A stretch of DNA of 63,737 nucleotides, filler included, from Octopus bimaculoides (lineage: Eukaryota), in assembly GCF_001194135.2 (NCBI RefSeq). It is 6 parts of 4 records of this genome, joined end to end, with 100 filler letters (N's around TTAATTAATTAA, not from the genome) between each part and the next. Parts side by side here need not be neighbours in the genome. Positions count along the whole stretch, not along the records: positions 1 to 13,908 come from NC_068995.1; 5 more parts are not named here. One strand, written 5' to 3'. The position numbers were made by a program, and so were the translations under genes. Of the stretch, positions 1 through 13,908 are shown one piece after another (the stretch's first letter is position 1; each line of letters starts with the position of its first letter). The notes below the pieces were generated by a model. The model was given only the letters and a program-made list of their open reading frames with translations. It was not told where the DNA came from and searched no databases.

Positions 1-107
1 GATTTTGTAGTTATTCTAGTATTATACAACTTCTACTCGTCAGTATAATATGGACCATATTATACTGACGAGTAGAAATTGTATAATACTACAATAACTA
101 CGAAATC
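1..107. repeat. Near-perfect inverted repeat (53-bp arms, 1-nt spacer)
   Basis: 1-53 is the reverse complement of 55-107 except at 3 positions (6/102 T-G, 16/92, 30/78). It may extend beyond the window start. Confidence 0.95.
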
Positions 108-246
108 ATGATTTATAATTTAGTTCGTTTTTTTAAGGGGTTGGCTTTGAGAGTTGCATTTCCTCGCATTCGGTAAAAATGTGTTTTTTTATAGTAGTCT
201 GACCTTAAAGTCCCTCATGGCGTGAGGCGTTATTATATAGTAATGC

Positions 247-284
<38 letters not shown>

Positions 285-879
285 AACTAGCTAGTCAAGA
301 AAATCTGTATGAGAGATTGAATCAGCATTTGTTCTAGGAAGTAGCGGTCAACACAACCTAAACACAGATGTTTCCTTGCAACCTCATTGAGGAAACCTCC
401 TCCAAGGTCTACAGCTGCGCTACCGTCTCTGTCCTGTTCCTTGTATTTTTAGGTGGCATTACACACTACTTCTCAGTAGGATTTTCTTCGTTAGCAAGAT
501 TGCTTGTTTTACCTGAAGAGTTGTACCTTCCGGCTTGCTCACGCTATTAACGTAACCCCTCTCACCCAAATCTTAACCACCACCTGATCAACCAAGCTAC
601 ATGTGTGAGTTTCCTCTTACTGCAAGGATGTCTCCTTAAGCAACTTCACCTTATTCGCTACTGGTTACATGTAACCCAGTACAACCTGTTACATGTTCGG
701 GTCGTCGGTGACTATACTGGCAAACCCACCATTCTTGCTTTGTGAGGAGGGTGATAGCTGGACACCCTGCAGGACGGAAAATAAAACCTGTCATACCGGA
801 CGGAGGAACTCATGAATAGTCAACGTCCATCCAACTATATATATGTGTGTATATAATTTTTTTTCTGATGTATTTAATT

Positions 880-3135
880 CCATATATTTGGCGGCAGATG
901 GGTCTCCTTAACCGTGGTGAAGGCATCCCATCAAGGAGAGGGAAACTCTGATATAAAACCAGGTCTTTGGTTGCTGAGGGTCTCCTTAACGGGGCTGTAC
1001 TACCAGCAAACTGACTCATAGGGTAGACTAGGCTCTCCAGTTTGTTTATAGAGGCTCGTCTAAGAGATGGAAACTTCTGAGAAAAAAGCCCGAGTTGTGT
1101 TGTTCTTGATATTGTGGCACATATGTGCACCATATTCTTGTTATCATCACTACCAAAAAGTGTGGCTGGTTTTACACAAGTTTCCAACACTGAAATCAAA
1201 TCATATGTGTGGGGTTTCTGACATCTTACATTTATTCATTCAATACGGCACATCTTTAACTTGAAAAGGGGTCAAACATTCCTCTGGCGAGAGAGTCAAC
1301 GCGGCAGGGCTGGTGAAGGATATTACTGGAAGTCTCTTGTTGGATCTCTACTCAGTCGGCGAACATTGGGTGATGACCAGTCCAATGCAGAACTTGTGGG
1401 TAACTGTGTTGTACGTATTTTCCAGTGGTGACAAAGCACTGCTTTCCCCTATAGGGCGGGACGAGAAATAGAGCCCCAAACATTGCTTACTCACCTTAAA
1501 CTTGTCAGCCCGCTGAAGCCGTCTGGATATTTAGTAATGCATTCAAAACACGAACAAATCTAAGAATATTAACCTTGGTTCTTGGAAAGTGCGCGCTCTT
1601 CAAGAAGGTCACTCAGCAGCAAAACGAAAGATAGCACCATTGGCTCTTGAACTAAAGTTAGAAGAATGTAAAGGTGGATATATATTTTTCTGGTGTGAAA
1701 GAAATGAAGACGAGCCACACCACTTTGGTTTTGGTTTAGTCATCAAAAGAGAAATAGCTAGATCCTTTCTTTCTCTGCCCAAAGGTATTTCTGGTCGCAT
1801 CATGACACTAACGTTTGAACTACACTCGTGCTATGCTTGTCAGCGATGGCCAGCACTAAGCAGAAAAAGAATGAATTTTACAGCCAACTCCGTGATGTCA
1901 TCTCCAGTTGTCACCATAGGGATAAAATTATCCTTATGGGAAACTTTAACGCCTGTGCTGGTACTGGCTGTCATGCATGGAAGTGTGTAATTAGTCGTCA
2001 TGGCGTAGGTCGAATTAAGTGCAGCGCTCTGCGTGTGCTCTCTATTTGCAGGAAATTCAGTCTAAACATCACCATTACATTTTTTAACAACGGCCCGAAG
2101 GCATCCTAGATATAAAGATTGGCATCTCATAGATTATGTTATCACTCAGAAACGAGATAATAGGAACCTTAACATTACACATTCATTTCGTAACACCTGC
2201 TATCTCTCTGACCATTCCCTTCTACGTGGTAAGGTTACGTTCCATCTGAAAAGCAGAAGACTACAAAAGTCATAAGTGCCTAAGCGTACTAATGTTCCGC
2301 CTTTGAAAGCCGTTGAACATCAGGATGAACTCTTTATCAAGTTGGACACTACATTCACTGTTGACATCATCGATGACATAGAATCATCTTGGAAGGCTCT
2401 GCGTGATGCAACGCAGTGTGCATCTGTAGACGTTCTTGGACTTCCTGTTCGTAAACAACAAGAATGGTTCAACTACAACAAAACAAATGTCCAACAGTTG
2501 ATAGATAAAATGCACAACTCTCACAAAGCATGGATACATGATAAGAGCTAATTCAGAGAAGAGAATGCCTGCAAGAAATACAGATTCCAGGCCCAACATG
2601 CTATGAGACAGATGAAAGGGGCTTGGTGGTCTTTCAAGGCTACTGAATCCCAAAAACGCTTGAGACAGAAATGATCCTAAAGCATTTCATGATGGCCTCA
2701 AGAAAGCGTATGTTCCTCAAGAGCATTGTGTTATTCCTATTTTTTCATCGAATCGAGAGACCCAACTGACTGATAAATCTGACATCCTGAAACGATGGAA
2801 AGATCACTTTGAAGCCGTGCTGAACTCCACCTCAGTAACTAATGACGATGCTATAATATCTGTTCCACAGCACACTGAAATGCCGGAACTGTCTCAGGAG
2901 ACAATCTTCATGGAAGTGGTAAATTTATTAAACAGGTCTCTTCTGGTAAAGCACACGGCAGGGATACCATCCCTCCTGGAGTCTACAAGTATTGTGGACA
3001 GAAACATTCGAAGAAACTGCATGGCTTCTTCATAAACATTGGAATGGTAGACCGTGTACTACAGGACTTCAAGGATGCCTCAATTCAACATCTTTATGAA
3101 AACAAAGGAAACAGAAGCTAAAGACAACAGTAACA
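880..3135 (+). mobile_element. Degenerate RTE-clade (BovB-like) LINE: 5' UTR, APE endonuclease and start of RT
   Basis: Frameshifted peptides GGYIFFW...GFGLVIK...PKGISGRIMTL, EFYSQL...DKIILMGNFNACAG, ESSWKALRDA...KQQEWF, RWKDHFEAVLN and QDFKDASIQHL match RTE ORF motifs. Many stops; ends at a (TA)n tract. Confidence 0.85.
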
Positions 3136-3185
3136 TCGTCCTCTATGGGATCGCCACATTTACTTGGGAAATATAATATATATAT

Positions 3186-3256
<71 letters not shown>

Positions 3257-3749
3257 GAGCAAGAGACAGAGACAGAGATAGAGAGAGATTGTTTATACCC
3301 ACTTTAATGTGGCTGTCTTGCAAGAGATCACGACGGTAGTGTCATTTAACCCAAGGAAGGTATCTTCTCTAGCTAGTTTATTCTATGTGCTTCTCTCACT
3401 CGATAATTATTGCAAGCGGTAGATAACTCCTGCCACCTTATTTCTGAAGCAACCAGACCACATATATATATGCAGGTATATCTATGTAGAGAAAGTTGGA
3501 TTCCTGCTCACCAAAGGATTCAGTATAACAGATACATTCTAGCCCGTTTTATGAAATGACTTCGCACAGTATCTTAGGTAATCTGACGCCCATCTAATAA
3601 AGACGCTCGTCATATATGGTATGTATGGAAACAATTTAGGCTGCCCTTTGTCATTGGAAGTGAGGAACTATCACATCCAGTTTGTGGGGTTTTGAAATGC
3701 ACAAAATGACGTCGCGTGAGTTAGTGAGTATTAGGATTCACTGAGTTAT

Positions 3750-4170
3750 GTCTCTGTGTTATTCAAGAGTTTTTTCTCTCGCGTCAACAATCCCGAGGGC
3801 GTCTTAATTGGCGGCAAAACTGATGAGGATTGGTATATGTTCCGGGGACTGGTAGAGGGTGATGTTTGGGTAGAACCGTTTGTTTATTGGGGACTAGACG
3901 TGTTTCTAAATCTTCAGCGTGATGTATCGTTGGCTATACATACATGTTCTATGCGCGTCCATTTACGTATAGTTAGGTCAACCTTTGCTGGACACTCAGT
4001 TTTTGATGGCGGAAAAACCGATGGAAGAGTTAGTTCGTAGCGCTTATGACCATGTTTAAGACGGTGTTCCAGCGATCACGTATTTTCTCTCGTGTAAGGA
4101 CTATCCAAAACGTTCGCTCTTGAAGTTTATGAACGTGTTCCAGTAAAAGGAATTTTTAAAAACTGATACA
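3750..4170 (-). mobile_element. Possible Penelope-like GIY-YIG C-terminal remnant
   Basis: Minus-strand frame reads SLEHRLKHGH...RKWTRIEHVCI followed by a Ser/Thr/Pro-rich tail, with stops. Weak motif match only. Confidence 0.3.
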
Positions 4171-4289
4171 CTCTCTTACATAACTTTCAGATTATGTTAC
4201 TGTTGAAATAATATATGTAATTTTCTAGGATTCTTCACTTGACGTTTTAATCAGTGCTGCTTTCCATCAAAGAACATTTATGCCTAGCC

Positions 4290-4790
4290 AGAGGCATTAT
4301 GTGTCGTGGAGATTAAAGAGAATTATCGTTGTTAAATGTTTCTGAAAGAATCTTTTTCTTGCCTACATACAGGAATTTCAGTCAAACTGTAAAAATCTCA
4401 CTTCTCCAGTGTACCGATCTAAAAGCGCAATATTTCGCATGCGAACACAAAAAATATTGTTTCTACTAATACAGTAAACAGTCTCATATCTACTGCCCAG
4501 CAACATTTTTGCCAAAATTTTTACACATATAAGCATCGACACCCACACATGAGGTTAAATGTATTGGCACTCATGTATGATCTGTTCCAAAAAGGCTGGC
4601 ACTCATCCAGTTTGTTCCAAAAACACTACAAGCATATCAACCTTTCCCAAAATACAACTGATTGAAATCATTGCTCAAAAGTTTTTGACATGGGATAAAA
4701 GTATTGATTATAATATATTTTTTTGTCTTCCACGATTTGCTTTCGTCCATTTCGCAGCAACCACAAGCACACCTTCCTCTGCAGTAACAA
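4290..4790 (-). pseudogene. Decayed Cys-rich ORF resembling the P2X7 ballast-like domain (probably a transposon accessory ORF)
   Basis: One minus frame reads RCACGCCEM...NDFNQL...HAKYCAFRSVHW...YVGKKK with in-frame stops. This recalls C.CG.C..M...F..L...R..AYR.F..W...LGK of ballast-like proteins. Confidence 0.4.
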
Positions 4791-7849: not shown

Positions 7850-9230
7850 TAAATGAGACCGCTATCACCACGGATGAATGCGTAACGCTTGAAAGTCCAA
7901 GTTTATTTCAATAGAAAGTAGAATAGATATGGATTCTTCCGAGCACAATCCACAGCTCCTGGAATGTGTATCATAAGCTTGCGCGTGCCTTACAATTAAC
8001 CAGGATAGCTCATAGCTGGTGCTCTCAGTTTTCAGTTGCCAGAGAAAGTCCTCCAGCGATGTTACGCGTCTCTTGTTCGCTTCTTTCAAGCTAGAGACAT
8101 GGTTGCAATATCAATCCTTGAACGAATCGGCTATGGTGCCTACGTACATGTACAGGCCTCTCCGTGTGTGCGCTGTTCATATATAAATGATGTTGCGAGT
8201 CATGCAGAAGTTATTGAGTGGGCATCCCTACACGATTACCTATTGCTGGCCATTGTTAATGTCCAGTGATAGTATCGAGCTATTCCCGTCGTCACAGTTA
8301 CGTGTGGGTGCGCTTTCTCTGTGCTGTTGCGATTCAGGTTGTGTGGGTTACTTTGTATTGGAATTTTATTAGTTCTGGTTTAGTCTGGGCTATGGGATCG
8401 CGTGGTTGTCGCTTCCTCGGTGAGGATTATATACTAGTTCATTGTTTGTGCATTCAGAGATGGTCTTTTTCAAGTCTTGTTAAGCTTGGTGCTATTTATC
8501 CGATGCTTATGTTGCTTCAAGTGGTATCTATGCCATTTCTGGAAGTATCTGTCAAGTGCTACCAGACACTATCTAGAGATCTCGGAAGATATATTGCAAG
8601 CGTGAATCCCTAACACCAAATACAGAAAAGTTACCAGAGAATTGTACGCTTTCTGTATTTCGTGTTATGTTTATTGGTCCGCAAGTGTTGTGTTTGTTCA
8701 ATGCGATCAATTTTGTTGCGTGTATCTTTGTTTAGATAGGAGATTTTGTGGATAGACGTGTTAGTATCACTGTTATTGTAATAGTTGGGTGCTACCCGTC
8801 TATGCTGGTGTGCCAGTGTAATTTCCTTACGTGTCTGCTCTAGGATTTTGTGTGTCGGTGTTGGTGGTGTGTGTTTCGTTTGTGTGTGAGATGTGTGTGT
8901 GTGTATGAATCCCGTCTGTTCTTTGTATCCGGTCCTAGCTAGTGTCTCGTTTTAATAGGGTGCATGTAGATCAAATAATTTGGGATTGGCAGACAATCGG
9001 GAAACCCTCGTTTGAATATTGCCCAAATGTTCCCGAATAATGGAAGGTGACTGGTTCAACCTGTTGCTAATGTACTTTAGGTTAGAATTTGGTTTGTGGA
9101 TGGGCTTCTTCAGACTGGTATCAAGGTTCAATGTGGCATCCAGGAAGTTAACCTTGCAGAATACAATTTCGAAAGTTATAGCTAGTCCTATACTTCTAAC
9201 TATATCTTGAATAGATTTTTCTTACGTCTT
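7850..9230 (-). mobile_element. Second Penelope-like family remnant(s) with a CxLC-type GIY-YIG end
   Basis: KPIHKPNSNLKYISNRLNQSPSII, RLSANPKLF...LARTGY, CPLNNFCMTRNIIY and LWQLK...SWLIVRHAQAY...SCGLCSEESISIL; frameshifted. Confidence 0.8.
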
Positions 9231-9233
9231 TCA

Positions 9234-9346
9234 GTTCGCCTATATTGATTGAAATATGTTATTAAAGTGTATATATATATATACTATATATATATATATA
9301 TATATATATACTCTTTAAGGACATGTTTGAATCAATATAGGCGAAC
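9234..9346. repeat. Imperfect palindrome centred on (TA)n
   Basis: gttcgcctatattgatt (9234-9250) and aatcaatataggcgaac (9330-9346) are exact reverse complements; pairing continues inward with a few mismatches. Confidence 0.9.
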
Positions 9347-9609
9347 CTCATGTCGAAGAGGAAAAGAAGTGTTTATGACGTAACTTGTGTCTCAAGAGTA
9401 TAGTATCTTTATCTTTGCACTCATTGATTATCATCAATATATTTACTCTTCATGTATTCAGTAAACGCCTGATGCAATGAAATGCTCTGTCTGTACTATA
9501 CATATGTGTATGGAATAATTCTACTATTTACATGCATACACACACACACGCACACACACACACACACTCACACACACACACACATATGTATATATACAGA
9601 CATAAATAT

Positions 9610-9647
<38 letters not shown>

Positions 9648-10628
9648 AATNNNNNNNNNNNNNNNNNNNNNNNNNNNNNNNNNNNNNNNNNNNNNNNNNN
9701 NNNNNNNNNNNNNNNNNNNNNNNNNNNNNNNNNNNNNNNNNNNNNNNNNNNNNNNNNNNNNNNNNNNNNNNNNNNNNNNNNNNNNNNNNNNNNNNNNNNN
9801 NNNNNNNNNNNNNNNNNNNNNNNNNNNNNNNNNNNNNNNNNNNNNNNNNNNNNNNNNNNNNNNNNNNNNNNNNNNNNNNNNNNNNNNNNNNNNNNNNNNN
9901 NNNNNNNNNNNNGTGTGTGTGTCTGTGTGTGTGTGTGTGCGTGATTATGTATGTATATCTATTGATAAACATGTGTGGGTGTGGGCCATTGAAATATATA
10001 TTTCCCGGGAACTATGAAGGCACGCACGCGCGCGCATTCGCGTGTATATACTTATATAATGTGTGGCTGTCTAGTTTTTATATTATCTCTCCGTGTAGCT
10101 TCTATGTTATTGCGCTTCAAGTTACAACCTGAATCCACTTGGAACAAATGGATTCAAAATATGGTTAGTACCAGATTTTCATGACTTGTTAAACTTTTCG
10201 TTCATGACAGTTACATAACAAATTATAGAAATGAATGAACATAATTTTATATGCATATTTTGCAGAACTTTCTGTTATTCTTTTCTTTGAGTTTTATACA
10301 TGTAAGTCCAAAATATCTTATAAGGAAAATAATGCTACGTTTATTTTAAGTATAAACTTAGCGGGTGATATTTTTATTCGACAGGATTATTAAGCAAAAT
10401 ATCATGTGAACATCATTTATACACTAACTAAACAGCATATTTTGATAAGGTTATTTCTACAGATATTCTATAGAGAAATAACCTCAACAAAATAATGTAA
10501 GAAGCACTGCCGACGCAGTAGAACTGTTTTATAAAAGCGATTAATATGCTTTATGTTTGCATAACGAAGTACCACGGACCTGCGAATCATTAACGTTTAT
10601 AAACATCATATGTATACATGTATACATA

Positions 10629-10670
<42 letters not shown>

Positions 10671-12057
10671 NNNNNNNNNNNNNNNNNNNNNNNNNNNNNN
10701 NNNNNNNNNNNNNNNNNNNNNNNNNNNNNNNNNNNNNNNNNNNNNNNNNNNNNNNNNNNNNNNNNNNNNNNNNNNNNNNNNNNNNNNNNNNNNNNNNNNN
10801 NNNNNNNNNNNNNNNNNNNNNNNNNNNNNNNNNNNNNNNNNNNNNNNNNNNNNNNNNNNNNNNNNNNNNNNNNNNNNNNNNNNNNNNNNNNNNNNNNNNN
10901 NNNNNNNNNNNNNNNNNNNNNNNNNNNNNNNNNNNNNNNNNNNNNNNNNNNNNNNNNNNNNNNNNNNNNNNNNNNNNNNNNNNNNNNNNNNNNNNNNNNN
11001 NNNNNNNNNNNNNNNNNNNNNNNNNNNNNNNATATAAAAACATCACATGTACACGTAAGGTGATTTTCAGATGAATGTTTTTCAACAACGTTTTTGAAAT
11101 ACAGGATGGCAAATATGAGTTTATAAATAGACGCAGTGCGCAGTGTCTCATGTGTAATATCATTGTGCAGAGAACGCTAATTATGTATATCAATACTACA
11201 TGCGATGTAGTTTCTCTCTGCCGGTTCTAGAATGGCTTCTGTCATTCAGAGATGGCAGGTGATATGGTAGAAATACTGAGGCATTCCAGAGTCATATTAT
11301 TATCATTCCAATTTTCTGCACGGAAAACTATTTTTCTCCCTTCATCTGCAAAATGTCTTCTGATACAAATTCTTGCAACAGTTGACGACTTTGATTTGTG
11401 TGAAAAGTAGTTGACAGATATGGACATCCAAATAGACAACGACGATGTAAGTGACGTCTAGGAGTAAGGGAATAGAAGTTAAATCGAACCTTGAATGGCA
11501 ACAGATTTAATAAAGTTGTGGCACAGAAATGTCAATCACCAAATATTCACTCGTACGACGTGACATAAAACTACTGAAGTGATGAGAGAGAGCCAAAACA
11601 CCTCTGTAAGATGTTACGATACAAGATTTTTAGGACAGATCTTGAGGATCAAACCATTGCTTTTGCCATATTTTTCTAGTGTGAAAGTCCTCTAGAGAAT
11701 TACATAAACGGGTAACAATTCAATTAGTCTGATTTTCCTCCTCGCAATCATTAACTCTATGGATATAAAAATTAAAACCACACAATATGGGAGCAATTCA
11801 CATAAAAATTCATTGCAGTAATTTTCGTTTCAAAAGTTGTTTTTTTTACATATGACACTCATAGTGATATCCAATTCATTTTCAATAAAGAAGCATAATC
11901 CTGTTTCAGTTCTATACATTATATTCTTTTTTCTAATACAATGTCAAATACTTTTTAACAAATTATCGAATTGTATTAGAATGGCAATGCATTTGTCTAC
12001 TTCTATAGGAACATGGGTGGATTTGTGTCAAGAATCTTGATTCCCAATTATATGGTA

Positions 12058-12375: not shown

Positions 12376-13547
12376 TAATAATAGAATCTGCTTATAAAGG
12401 ATCTGTTGTGATATTTTACACATTTCATAGTTTGGAATATTTGAGTAACATACTATTACAGTGTTCAATATTGGAAATGCGACCATCTGACTTGGAACCC
12501 ATTGGACTGCAACAACTTTACATATTCATATATTATACCTAGTATAGTCACCAAATACTTTAATATACAATTAAATGACACAGTATTAAGATAGCTATCT
12601 CGAAGTTAAATCTTACTCATTTGCATGGGTATCTATCTCATCATTTAAATTACTATAAACTTGGTGAATGATTACACATTCAGTTGACGACCATAGGTGC
12701 TATGTTCGGAGGTATATTGCTATATTCTAGTGAGAGAAGGTTATTATCGTTCTATCTCGGAGTATTCGAAAATAATATAAATAGCTGGTCGTTTGAGGAA
12801 ATGTAAGGTGTTTCATATTTGTAAATTTGTGTCCGTTCGATCATTGAACTCTCATGGGTTTCCAAAAGGGTTGCCATCGTTATTCTTATTCGTGTTGAGG
12901 TAAACGTTTGTGAAATCATATTTTATTTGCAAACATAGATTCATATAAGCTCCTTCACTACTTATTTCTTTCAGATTGCTGAGCAACCTACTCACCATGT
13001 AAATTTTTGCCACCAAAAGACCACTTTCATTTCTTCGTGTGTATATTGTTTTGACACTGGAATTATAATACCAGATATATATTGAGATTTGTAAATAAGA
13101 AACTCTGACTTCTCTAAAATTTGAAGGGAATATATGATACAAATGAATGAATTAAACATACTTGACTATACAAGTGACAATCTAAGTTAACATTTTCAAC
13201 TTTGTTTAAATGATTAAATTGGTCGAGGTAACATTTTCCATAAAGGTATTTTACAAATAACAATGTATTTTAAAAAGAAATGGAGAGCATTTTGAGAAAA
13301 CTCATTATTTGTATACTGCTTGTAAAGTGGAAGTTGTGTCCTGATGTATGCTGGTAAAGTATTGGGAAAACGAAAAAAGCTTTCTGCTCTATGTATCTTA
13401 TTTTGTTATAACAGTAATAAAATGTACAACAGTTATTTACAGTTCAACAGAACTATTACAAAATTTAGACAAATCAATATTTACTAGGAATTATTACCTC
13501 AAACACTAGAATATATAAATATTTAACTCTTAAAAATATTACAGAAA

Positions 13548-13907
13548 ATGAAACTCATGAAATATTTGGTTTTTAGCTTGAGTTCAATGATATTGATAGT
13601 AAATTCCAACCCAACGCATGAGGATGAAGAGCGATTGAAAAATACCTTGCTTTTGAATTATAGAAAAGATATAAGACCTGTTACTAATTTGCTTACATCT
13701 GTCGACATAGTTGCTTCCTTGATTCTTCACACACTGTATGACTTGGATTTCGTAAATAACTTACTGAAGGCTCGTTATTTGATTGTCCCATCGTGGACCG
13801 ATGAATATCTGACCTGGAATCCATTGGAATATAACAACATTACACACATATATATACCAAGAGATTTAATATGGACACCATCTCTGATGATGTGTAATTC
13901 AGTGAAT
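13548..13907 (+). CDS. Chemotactile receptor (CR)-type divergent nicotinic acetylcholine receptor-like Cys-loop channel subunit, N-terminal 120 aa, truncated by an assembly gap
   Basis: Signal peptide, then ligand-binding-domain hallmarks L..LL.NY.KDIRPV, TLYDLDFVNN, SWTDEYLTWNPLEYNNIT and IWTPS..CNS. No introns across a region that is multi-exon in canonical nAChRs. The frame is open into the N-run at 13909. Closely resembles octopus CRT1 as I recall it (not a search result). Confidence 0.88.
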
Positions 13908-13908
13908 G

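What the first reader, a model, noticed from the sequence alone, without database searches (positions are those of the whole stretch)
13548..13908. Octopus chemotactile-receptor paralog hidden by an assembly break
Seen: an uninterrupted, signal-peptide-bearing ORF with Cys-loop ligand-binding-domain motifs running straight into an artificial linker. Known: octopus CRs are a lineage-specific, nAChR-derived family mediating taste-by-touch in suckers. Inference: the Cys-loop and four TM helices lie in missing sequence, so this paralog may be absent or fragmentary in annotations and could be an uncharacterised receptor.
Basis: partly seen in the sequence, partly recalled or inferred. Interest (0 to 1): 0.8.

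Follow-up and report, generated by a model that had tools for sequence, protein, structure and literature searches.

The report
Truncated octopus chemotactile-receptor gene copy
The open reading frame is the first 120 codons of a taste-by-touch (chemotactile) receptor gene of Octopus bimaculoides, a young tandem duplicate of an annotated neighbour that has no protein model of its own because the sequence breaks off; it is a real but ordinary new member of a known family.

Summary
Window 13548-13908 (+) is a 120-codon ORF, open to the piece edge. It encodes a signal peptide and the first ~100 residues of a Cys-loop ligand-binding domain (Pfam E=1e-18).

The best solved relative is O. bimaculoides CRT1 (60% identity, E=3e-39), against ~1e-14 for 5-HT3A and nAChRs.

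The window is O. bimaculoides chromosome CM046615.1, 37,857,489-37,871,396. The ORF is the fourth gene of a same-strand tandem array of single-exon CR genes. It lies 20 kb downstream of XP_052829360.1 and is 95% identical to it in coding sequence and 5' flank. Both copies are co-orthologues of one O. vulgaris gene.

Their six amino-acid differences fall in the family's most variable columns. One of them is the position of the CRT1 ligand-contact residue Y58.

No protein model in the searched collections represents this copy. The piece begins exactly at the end of a 3,072-N gap, so a real gap at its end is likely but unproven.

The 3' two-thirds of the gene could not be reached, so I cannot say whether the gene is intact. 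I also could not check whether it is one of the published 26 CRs.

Verdict: a real, probably unannotated member of a known family; modest interest.

The parts
13548..13607 (+). Codons 1-20, MKLMKYLVFSLSSMILIVNS: predicted signal peptide of the CR precursor
   Evidence: K2 and K5, a hydrophobic core at residues 6-18, and small residues at -3/-1. Aligns with the CRT1 precursor N-terminus, and the solved chain 8eis starts at the equivalent of residue 21/22. The same 13 N-terminal codons are present upstream of the RefSeq start of the sister gene.
13608..13908 (+). Codons 21-120: N-terminal part of the extracellular ligand-binding domain (alpha1 helix, beta1-beta2 with the CR motif LYDLDFVNN, the loop-D strand ARYLIVPSW, WTDEYLTWNP, and the loop-A region IWTPSLMMCNS). 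The frame is cut by the piece edge.
   Evidence: Pfam PF02931 E=1e-18. 60% identity to CRT1. 94-95% identity to XP_052829360.1. Motifs and canonical-residue replacements from the alignment.
12790..13547 (+). 5' flank duplicated together with the gene (putative promoter, 5'UTR or intron end). It contains the acceptor-like AATATTACAG at 13535-13544, three bases before the ATG.
   Evidence: 95.4% identical to the 762 bp upstream of the sister gene. The block 12790-13908, flank plus coding start, is 88.8% identical to the O. vulgaris orthologue. The ACAG|AAA ATG motif is shared by three paralogous loci but not by the P0160 locus. A regulatory or splice role is inference only.
12430..12706 (+). Decayed relic of a CR ligand-binding domain, with in-frame stops, about 0.85-1.1 kb upstream of the intact ORF
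   Evidence: Two collinear tblastn segments to CR residues ~69-108 and ~126-166 (E=9e-5 with P0002), with stops. 81% nucleotide identity to CR coding sequence in five loci.
8878..10366 (+). Upstream intergenic blocks collinear with the O. vulgaris orthologous locus, interrupted by the assembly gap 9651-9912
   Evidence: Window 8878-9650 and 10013-10366 match L008 6741-7495 and 7577-7932 at 82-90%, in the same order as the gene block. N run.

Best explanation
The ORF is the 5' end of a single-exon chemotactile-receptor (CR) gene of Octopus bimaculoides. It covers the signal peptide and the first ~100 residues of the ligand-binding domain.

Shown here:
- Position: chromosome CM046615.1, with the ATG at 37,871,036. 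It is the fourth member of a head-to-tail array of at least nine CR genes.
- Origin: a recent tandem duplication of about 20 kb in the O. bimaculoides lineage. Its sister copy is XP_052829360.1, and both are co-orthologues of a single intact 400-aa O. vulgaris gene.

Inferred:
- If the missing ~280 codons are intact, as they are in the sister copy and the orthologue, the product is a ~400-aa subunit with a Cys-loop and four transmembrane helices.
- That subunit would assemble into homo- or heteropentameric cation channels in sucker sensory cells, gated by poorly soluble hydrophobic ligands bound at the subunit interface. This is the mechanism described for CRT1.
- The few differences from the sister copy sit on the loop-D strand and other hypervariable pocket positions, so the two copies probably differ in ligand tuning.

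The gene has no protein model, most likely because the short-read-derived assembly breaks inside it.
For: Family:
- PF02931, E=1e-18.
- CRT1 is by far the best solved relative: E=3e-39 and 60% identity, against ~1e-14 for 5-HT3A and nAChRs.
- The NJ tree places the fragment with XP_052829360.1 (86% bootstrap) inside an octopus CR subclade. Identity is 52-94% to octopus CRs and 24-39% to canonical nAChRs.
- The CR motifs LYDLDFVNN and MCNS are present. The canonical loop-D Trp, loop-A Tyr and WxPD Asp are replaced by L78, C116 and S112.

Locus:
- Window 1-4300 is 100% identical to the DNA downstream of the XP_052829360.1 gene.
- All array loci fetched are on the same strand and contain uninterrupted ~400-aa ORFs.

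Duplication:
- 95.4% identity over the 758-bp flank, and 17 differences in 360 coding bases.
- Both copies are collinear with the O. vulgaris locus, at 88.8% and 87.3%.

Constraint:
- dN/dS is 0.28, with 9 non-synonymous against 8 synonymous changes (binomial P=0.015).
- The window copy is the more conservative lineage: 3 amino-acid changes against 6.

Pocket divergence:
- The six replaced sites rank 1, 3, 4, 5, 12 and 18 of 99 in column variability among 20 octopus CRs (permutation P<1e-5).
- Position 78 corresponds to CRT1 Y58, a ligand-contact residue whose mutation impairs responses. Position 59 corresponds to the positively selected Y39 (numbering offset).

No protein model:
- Nothing lies between 79% and 100% identity to the sister copy. 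Its 90% cluster holds only itself and an older model of the same gene.

Family properties cited: bioRxiv 10.1101/2025.03.03.641191, PMC11526382, PMC13174522.
Against: - Only 30% of the expected coding sequence is visible. The Cys-loop, loops B/C/E and all transmembrane helices are unseen, so a stop, a frameshift or a truncated duplication cannot be excluded.
- The array does contain dead CR relics.
- No expression evidence could be obtained.
- The constraint statistics rest on 17 substitutions shared between two lineages.
- The first single-fragment protein search missed even the 94%-identical neighbour. The index is therefore imperfect, and 'no protein model' is not absolute.
- That the piece edge is a real assembly gap is inferred, not seen.
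Confidence: 0.8

Rival explanations
1. It is a dead or truncated duplicate. Only the 5' part of the gene was copied or survives, and the ORF is a still-open remnant that encodes no functional receptor.
For: CR relics with stops lie 1 kb upstream in the window (12430-12706) and in locus L007 (16907-17564), so birth and death occur in this array. There is no protein model for this copy. The duplication is young (dS 0.11), so 120 codons could stay open for a while without selection.
Against: There is no stop or indel in 360 bases, while the adjacent 758-bp flank has 31 mismatches and 2 gaps. Synonymous changes are in excess (P=0.015). The window lineage changed fewer amino acids than its annotated sister, and only at family-hypervariable sites. 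The start codon, signal peptide and 5' flank are conserved with the O. vulgaris orthologue.
Confidence: 0.17
2. It is an assembly artefact: an uncollapsed haplotype or a misassembled second copy of the XP_052829360.1 gene, not a separate locus.
For: The region comes from a heavily gapped, short-read-derived scaffold, with N runs every 1-3 kb. The two copies are very similar (95%).
Against: 4.6% divergence, with 6 amino-acid differences in 120 codons, looks too high for allelic variation. That judgement uses my recollection of very low heterozygosity in this genome, which I did not check here. Similarity between the two loci is limited to ~1.1 kb plus one 0.75-kb block out of 14 kb. The window copy has its own collinear match to the O. 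vulgaris upstream region, and it keeps ancestral states where the sister copy is derived.
Confidence: 0.02
3. It is a canonical acetylcholine-gated or serotonin-gated Cys-loop subunit, as the automatic names of its neighbours suggest ('acr-2-like', '5-HT3A-like').
For: RefSeq names of the closest proteins. It shares the Neur_chan_LBD domain.
Against: Identity is 24-39% to canonical nAChRs, against 52-94% to octopus CRs, and the fragment clusters within octopus CRs. The canonical loop-D Trp, loop-A Tyr and WxPD Asp are all replaced. CRT1 matches at E=3e-39, against ~1e-14 for 5-HT3A and nAChR.
Confidence: 0.01

Closest known systems
XP_052829360.1 (O. bimaculoides 'acetylcholine receptor subunit beta-type acr-2-like'; older model UniProt A0A0L8GN14)
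   Same: The neighbouring gene 20 kb upstream on the same strand. 114 of 120 residues are identical once its true upstream ATG is used. The signal peptide is identical and the 5' flank is 95.4% identical.
   Different: Six replacements: N32K, V55N, L78V, V80M, S82R and M114L. Three of them lie on the loop-D strand. Codons 55, 80 and 82 changed independently in both copies. The sister copy is complete (400 codons). The window copy is visible for 120 codons only.
O. vulgaris 'acr-2-like' protein of 400 aa (P0159; locus OX597828.1, gap-free)
   Same: Positional (co-)orthologue. It is 86% identical over the 120 residues. The locus is 88.8% identical over 1.1 kb, with collinear upstream blocks, and holds a single-exon intact gene.
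   Different: One copy was found at this O. vulgaris locus, against two in O. bimaculoides. It has W at position 82, where the two O. bimaculoides copies have S and R.
CRT1 (chemotactile receptor for terpenes 1, O. bimaculoides; PDB 8EIS, 9E6B-D)
   Same: Same family and the same domain layout over residues 4-119. 60% identity, with shared CR motifs (LYDLDFVNN, MCNS).
   Different: A different paralogue. The pocket residues differ: CRT1 Y39 corresponds to I59 and CRT1 Y58 to L78. Ligand specificity is therefore expected to differ. CRT1 is functionally and structurally characterised; this copy is not.
Canonical nicotinic acetylcholine receptor subunits (e.g. alpha7, alpha4) and 5-HT3A
   Same: Same superfamily fold and Pfam domain. 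The conserved WxDxxLxWNP motif is present.
   Different: Only 24-39% identical. The loop-D Trp, loop-A Tyr and WxPD Asp are lacking.

Membership tests
Cys-loop / pentameric ligand-gated ion channel superfamily | N-terminal extracellular ligand-binding domain (Pfam PF02931) | tested here: met
   E=1e-18, 68 bits against a cut-off of 26, profile positions 1-93 of 216. 98 PDB pLGIC sequences match at E<=0.01.
Cys-loop / pentameric ligand-gated ion channel superfamily | Cys-loop disulphide (C-x13-C) and four transmembrane helices (PF02932) | not testable with these tools
   These lie beyond the piece edge at 13908. They are present in the sister copy and the O. vulgaris orthologue, which says nothing certain about this copy.
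Octopus chemotactile receptors (CR clade) | Groups with known CRs, apart from canonical nAChRs | tested here: met
   Best solved relative is CRT1. NJ tree on 99 mature residues: sister to XP_052829360.1 (86% bootstrap) within an octopus CR subclade (79-80%). Canonical nAChRs form a separate cluster. Caveat: this is a short-fragment distance tree, and the deep split has low support.
Octopus chemotactile receptors (CR clade) | Canonical acetylcholine-binding residues replaced, giving a hydrophobic pocket | tested here: met
   Met for the two binding loops inside the fragment: loop-D Trp is L78 and loop-A Tyr is C116. The WxPD Asp is also replaced (S112). Loops B, C and E lie outside the piece and could not be tested.
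Octopus chemotactile receptors (CR clade) | Intronless coding sequence, in a tandem array of CR genes | tested here: inconclusive
   The ORF lies in a same-strand array whose other members are single uninterrupted ~400-codon ORFs. Intronless structure is cited from PMC13174522. Only the first 360 bases of this copy are visible, and they are uninterrupted.
Octopus chemotactile receptors (CR clade) | Expressed in sucker sensory epithelium; forms cation channels gated by poorly soluble ligands | not testable with these tools
   No transcriptome or functional data could be reached. The properties are known for CRT1 and CR840 only.
Octopus chemotactile receptors (CR clade) | Is one of the published 26 O. 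bimaculoides CRs | not testable with these tools
   The primary papers and supplementary tables are not held. An accession search found nothing.
Canonical nicotinic acetylcholine receptor subunits | Conserved aromatic box residues (loop-D Trp, loop-A Tyr) and clustering with nAChR subunits | tested here: not met
   L78 and C116 stand in place of Trp and Tyr. Identity is 24-39%, and the fragment clusters elsewhere.

The most novel reading that the evidence does not exclude
The window copy is an intact, expressed, O. bimaculoides-specific receptor that is missing from every protein catalogue, and possibly from the published set of 26. It and its 95%-identical neighbour are diverging by independent substitutions at the same three pocket-lining codons (55, 80, 82). 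That would be a very young pair caught in the act of ligand-pocket neofunctionalisation, and a natural minimal pair for mapping CR ligand specificity.
Probability: 0.3. Interest if true: 0.45.

Novelty: new member of a known kind. Interest (0 to 1): 0.27.

Why it matters
CRs are a recently discovered, lineage-specific sensory receptor family, and only two members (CRT1 and CR840) have been cloned and characterised. A copy that annotation pipelines miss because of assembly gaps means that family counts and selection analyses built on RefSeq models are incomplete.

A 95%-identical pair whose few differences sit at the loop-D/pocket positions would be a convenient natural experiment on how ligand tuning evolves.

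Beyond that, the result is expected: CRs are already known to be tandemly expanded and to diversify fast in the pocket.

Tried and rejected
- The single-fragment protein search found nothing. It missed even the 94% neighbour that the profile search found later, so that negative result was discarded as an index limitation.
- I tried to reach the sequence beyond 13908 through neighbouring annotated genes. The nearest downstream locus starts at 37,879,003, which leaves 37,871,397-37,879,002 unreachable. The first 9.9 kb of that locus hold no CR 3' fragment.
- The 90% cluster of the sister protein was checked for a hidden full-length model. Its second member is only an old chimeric model of the same gene.
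- Logan and ENA proteins in the family are from other species; none matches these loci at 100%. They give no expression evidence for O. bimaculoides.
- The primary CR papers (Cell 2020, two Nature 2023 papers, Curr Biol 2023) are not held. No supplements are held. Accession numbers are not mentioned anywhere in the library. No accession or gene identifiers for CRs appear in the two 2025 preprints.
- Pfam and PDB searches of the other long ORFs in the piece gave nothing significant.
- No Rfam family and no tRNA.
- The bacterial promoter/terminator scan was not used, because it does not apply to an animal genome.
- Structure prediction was not run. A 60%-identical solved structure already fixes the fold.

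Full report
**1. The observation**

Window 13548-13908 (+) starts with ATG and stays open for 120 codons up to the last genomic base. The other two forward frames are full of stops.

In the local AT-rich composition, 120 stop-free codons in a given frame has P about 4e-5. Even so, five stop-free runs of at least 120 codons exist in the piece, so length alone proves nothing.

Homology is decisive. Pfam Neur_chan_LBD matches at E=1e-18, covering profile positions 1-93 of 216. The best solved relative is the O. bimaculoides chemotactile receptor CRT1 (9E6B, 8EIS) at E=3e-39 and 60% identity. The next group, 5-HT3A and nAChR subunits, stands at about 1e-14.

Residues 1-20 (MKLMKYLVFSLSSMILIVNS) look like a signal peptide. 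They align with the CRT1 precursor, whose solved chain begins at the equivalent of residue 21/22.

**2. Where it is**

A profile search found an annotated O. bimaculoides protein, XP_052829360.1 (P0158), 94% identical over 107 residues.

Fetching its locus showed that window 1-4300 is 100% identical to the DNA just downstream of that gene. The piece is therefore CM046615.1:37,857,489-37,871,396 of GCA_001194135.2, and the ORF starts at 37,871,036.

Further look-ups place it in a same-strand array. Start positions are:
- 37,808,365
- 37,835,829
- 37,850,586
- 37,871,036 (the window ORF)
- 37,888,904
- 37,933,502
- 37,938,886
- 37,956,736
- 37,982,856

Every visible member is one uninterrupted ORF of about 400 codons. 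This agrees with the intronless structure reported for CRs (PMC13174522).

**3. Is the break real?**

The Ns after 13908 are the scan program's linker. However, the piece begins exactly where a 3,072-N gap of the assembly ends, and this region has N runs every 1-3 kb.

A real gap at the 3' edge is therefore likely, but I could not see it. The nearest reachable downstream DNA starts 7.6 kb further on and contains no CR 3' fragment.

**4. Origin**

The window copy and the P0158 locus are 95.4% identical over 758 bp of 5' flank. They differ at 17 of 360 coding bases, giving 6 amino-acid differences, dS 0.11 and dN/dS 0.28.

The P0158 locus carries the same upstream ATG and signal peptide, so the RefSeq model of 387 aa merely starts at an internal Met.

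The gap-free O. vulgaris locus of a 400-aa orthologue is collinear with both O. bimaculoides copies. It is 88.8% identical to the window block 12790-13908, with further upstream blocks at 82-90%, and 87.3% identical to the sister locus. The older paralogue P0161 matches it only across the gene, at 82%.

The duplication therefore happened in the O. bimaculoides lineage.

**5. Family membership**

On the 99 mature residues, the fragment pairs with XP_052829360.1 (86% bootstrap) inside an octopus CR subclade. Octopus CRs are 52-94% identical to it, and canonical nAChRs 24-39%.

It carries the CR motifs LYDLDFVNN and MCNS. It has L78, C116 and S112 where canonical subunits have the loop-D Trp, the loop-A Tyr and the WxPD Asp.

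No identical characterised CR was found.

**6. Constraint and divergence**

Synonymous changes are in excess (8 synonymous, 9 non-synonymous; binomial P=0.015).

Polarising with two outgroups, the window lineage has 3 amino-acid changes (V55, V80, S82) and 3 synonymous changes. The sister lineage has 6 amino-acid changes.

Codons 55, 80 and 82 changed independently in both copies. By my own arithmetic, the chance that all 3 codons changed in the window lineage fall among the 6 codons changed in the sister lineage is about 7e-5.

The six replaced sites rank 1, 3, 4, 5, 12 and 18 of 99 in variability among 20 octopus CRs (P<1e-5).

With the CRT1 mature numbering offset of 20, position 78 is CRT1 Y58. 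That residue is a ligand contact whose mutation impairs responses. Position 59 is the positively selected Y39. Positions 78/80/82 correspond to alpha7 W55/Q57/S59 of loop D; the alpha7 numbering is from established knowledge, and the alignment is.

This fits the reported concentration of positive selection in the CR pocket (PMC11526382).

**7. Annotation status**

Three protein searches and two cluster look-ups found no model for this copy. Nothing lies between 79% and 100% identity to the sister protein.

CRT1 itself is in that collection only via UniRef. Absence from RefSeq therefore does not mean that the field does not know the gene.

Whether this copy is one of the published 26 CRs could not be checked.

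**8. Mechanism**

Shown: the ORF encodes the N-terminus of a CR ligand-binding domain in the CR array.

Inferred from the sister copy, the orthologue and the CRT1 literature: a ~400-aa subunit forming pentameric cation channels in sucker sensory cells, gated by hydrophobic contact ligands, with tuning that differs from its sister through loop-D changes.

Main rival: a truncated or dead copy (about 0.17). This is plausible because CR relics occur in the array.

**9. Verdict**

A real, probably unannotated young member of a known receptor family.

Noticed in passing
window 12430-12706 (+): A decayed chemotactile-receptor ligand-binding-domain relic with in-frame stops lies about 1 kb upstream of the intact ORF. 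It has two collinear protein matches and 81% nucleotide identity to CR coding sequence. This indicates birth-and-death turnover in the array.
   Followed up: partly
window 2303-2452 and 2679-3032 (+): The old UniProt model A0A0L8GN14 (496 aa) of the upstream CR gene ends in two 'exons' taken from these window ORFs, 6-7 kb downstream of the real stop. This is a chimeric gene model. The surrounding ORFs (1589-3035) look like a decayed retrotransposon, but only a sub-threshold Exo_endo_phos_2 hit (E=0.065) supports that.
   Followed up: partly
window 1-107: The first 107 bases form a near-perfect palindrome: the reverse-strand self-match is 93.5% identical. It directly abuts the 3,072-N assembly gap. 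It may be a foldback element or an assembly-end artefact.
   Followed up: no
L001 9962-11161; L006 9902; L005 9830; L004 9935; L003 14183: Several RefSeq models in this array are N-terminally short (387, 363, 342 and 374 aa), although each locus has an upstream in-frame ATG giving ~400 aa with a signal peptide. XP_052829359.1 instead has a 71-aa foreign N-terminal extension spliced into the signal-peptide coding region, although a native start (MMSITYFVFSL...) is present.
   Followed up: partly
window codons 55, 80, 82 (13710-13712, 13785-13787, 13791-13793): Both young copies changed these same three codons independently, to different amino acids. One example is ancestral W82 (TGG), which became S (TCG) in one copy and R (CGG) in the other. 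These are among the five most variable columns of the family.
   Followed up: yes
window 9538-9650 and 10624-10670, next to N runs 9651-9912 and 10671-11031: Both internal assembly gaps open inside (AC)n/(AT)n microsatellites. The block between them (9913-10654) has an 87% copy upstream of the sister gene (L001 4445-5174), so the duplicated unit extends several kb upstream, with indels.
   Followed up: no
L007 15388-16563 and 16907-17564: A second full-length CR ORF in this locus is annotated only as a 177-aa C-terminal product. A further decayed CR relic follows it. These are more examples of incomplete CR annotation in the array.
   Followed up: no
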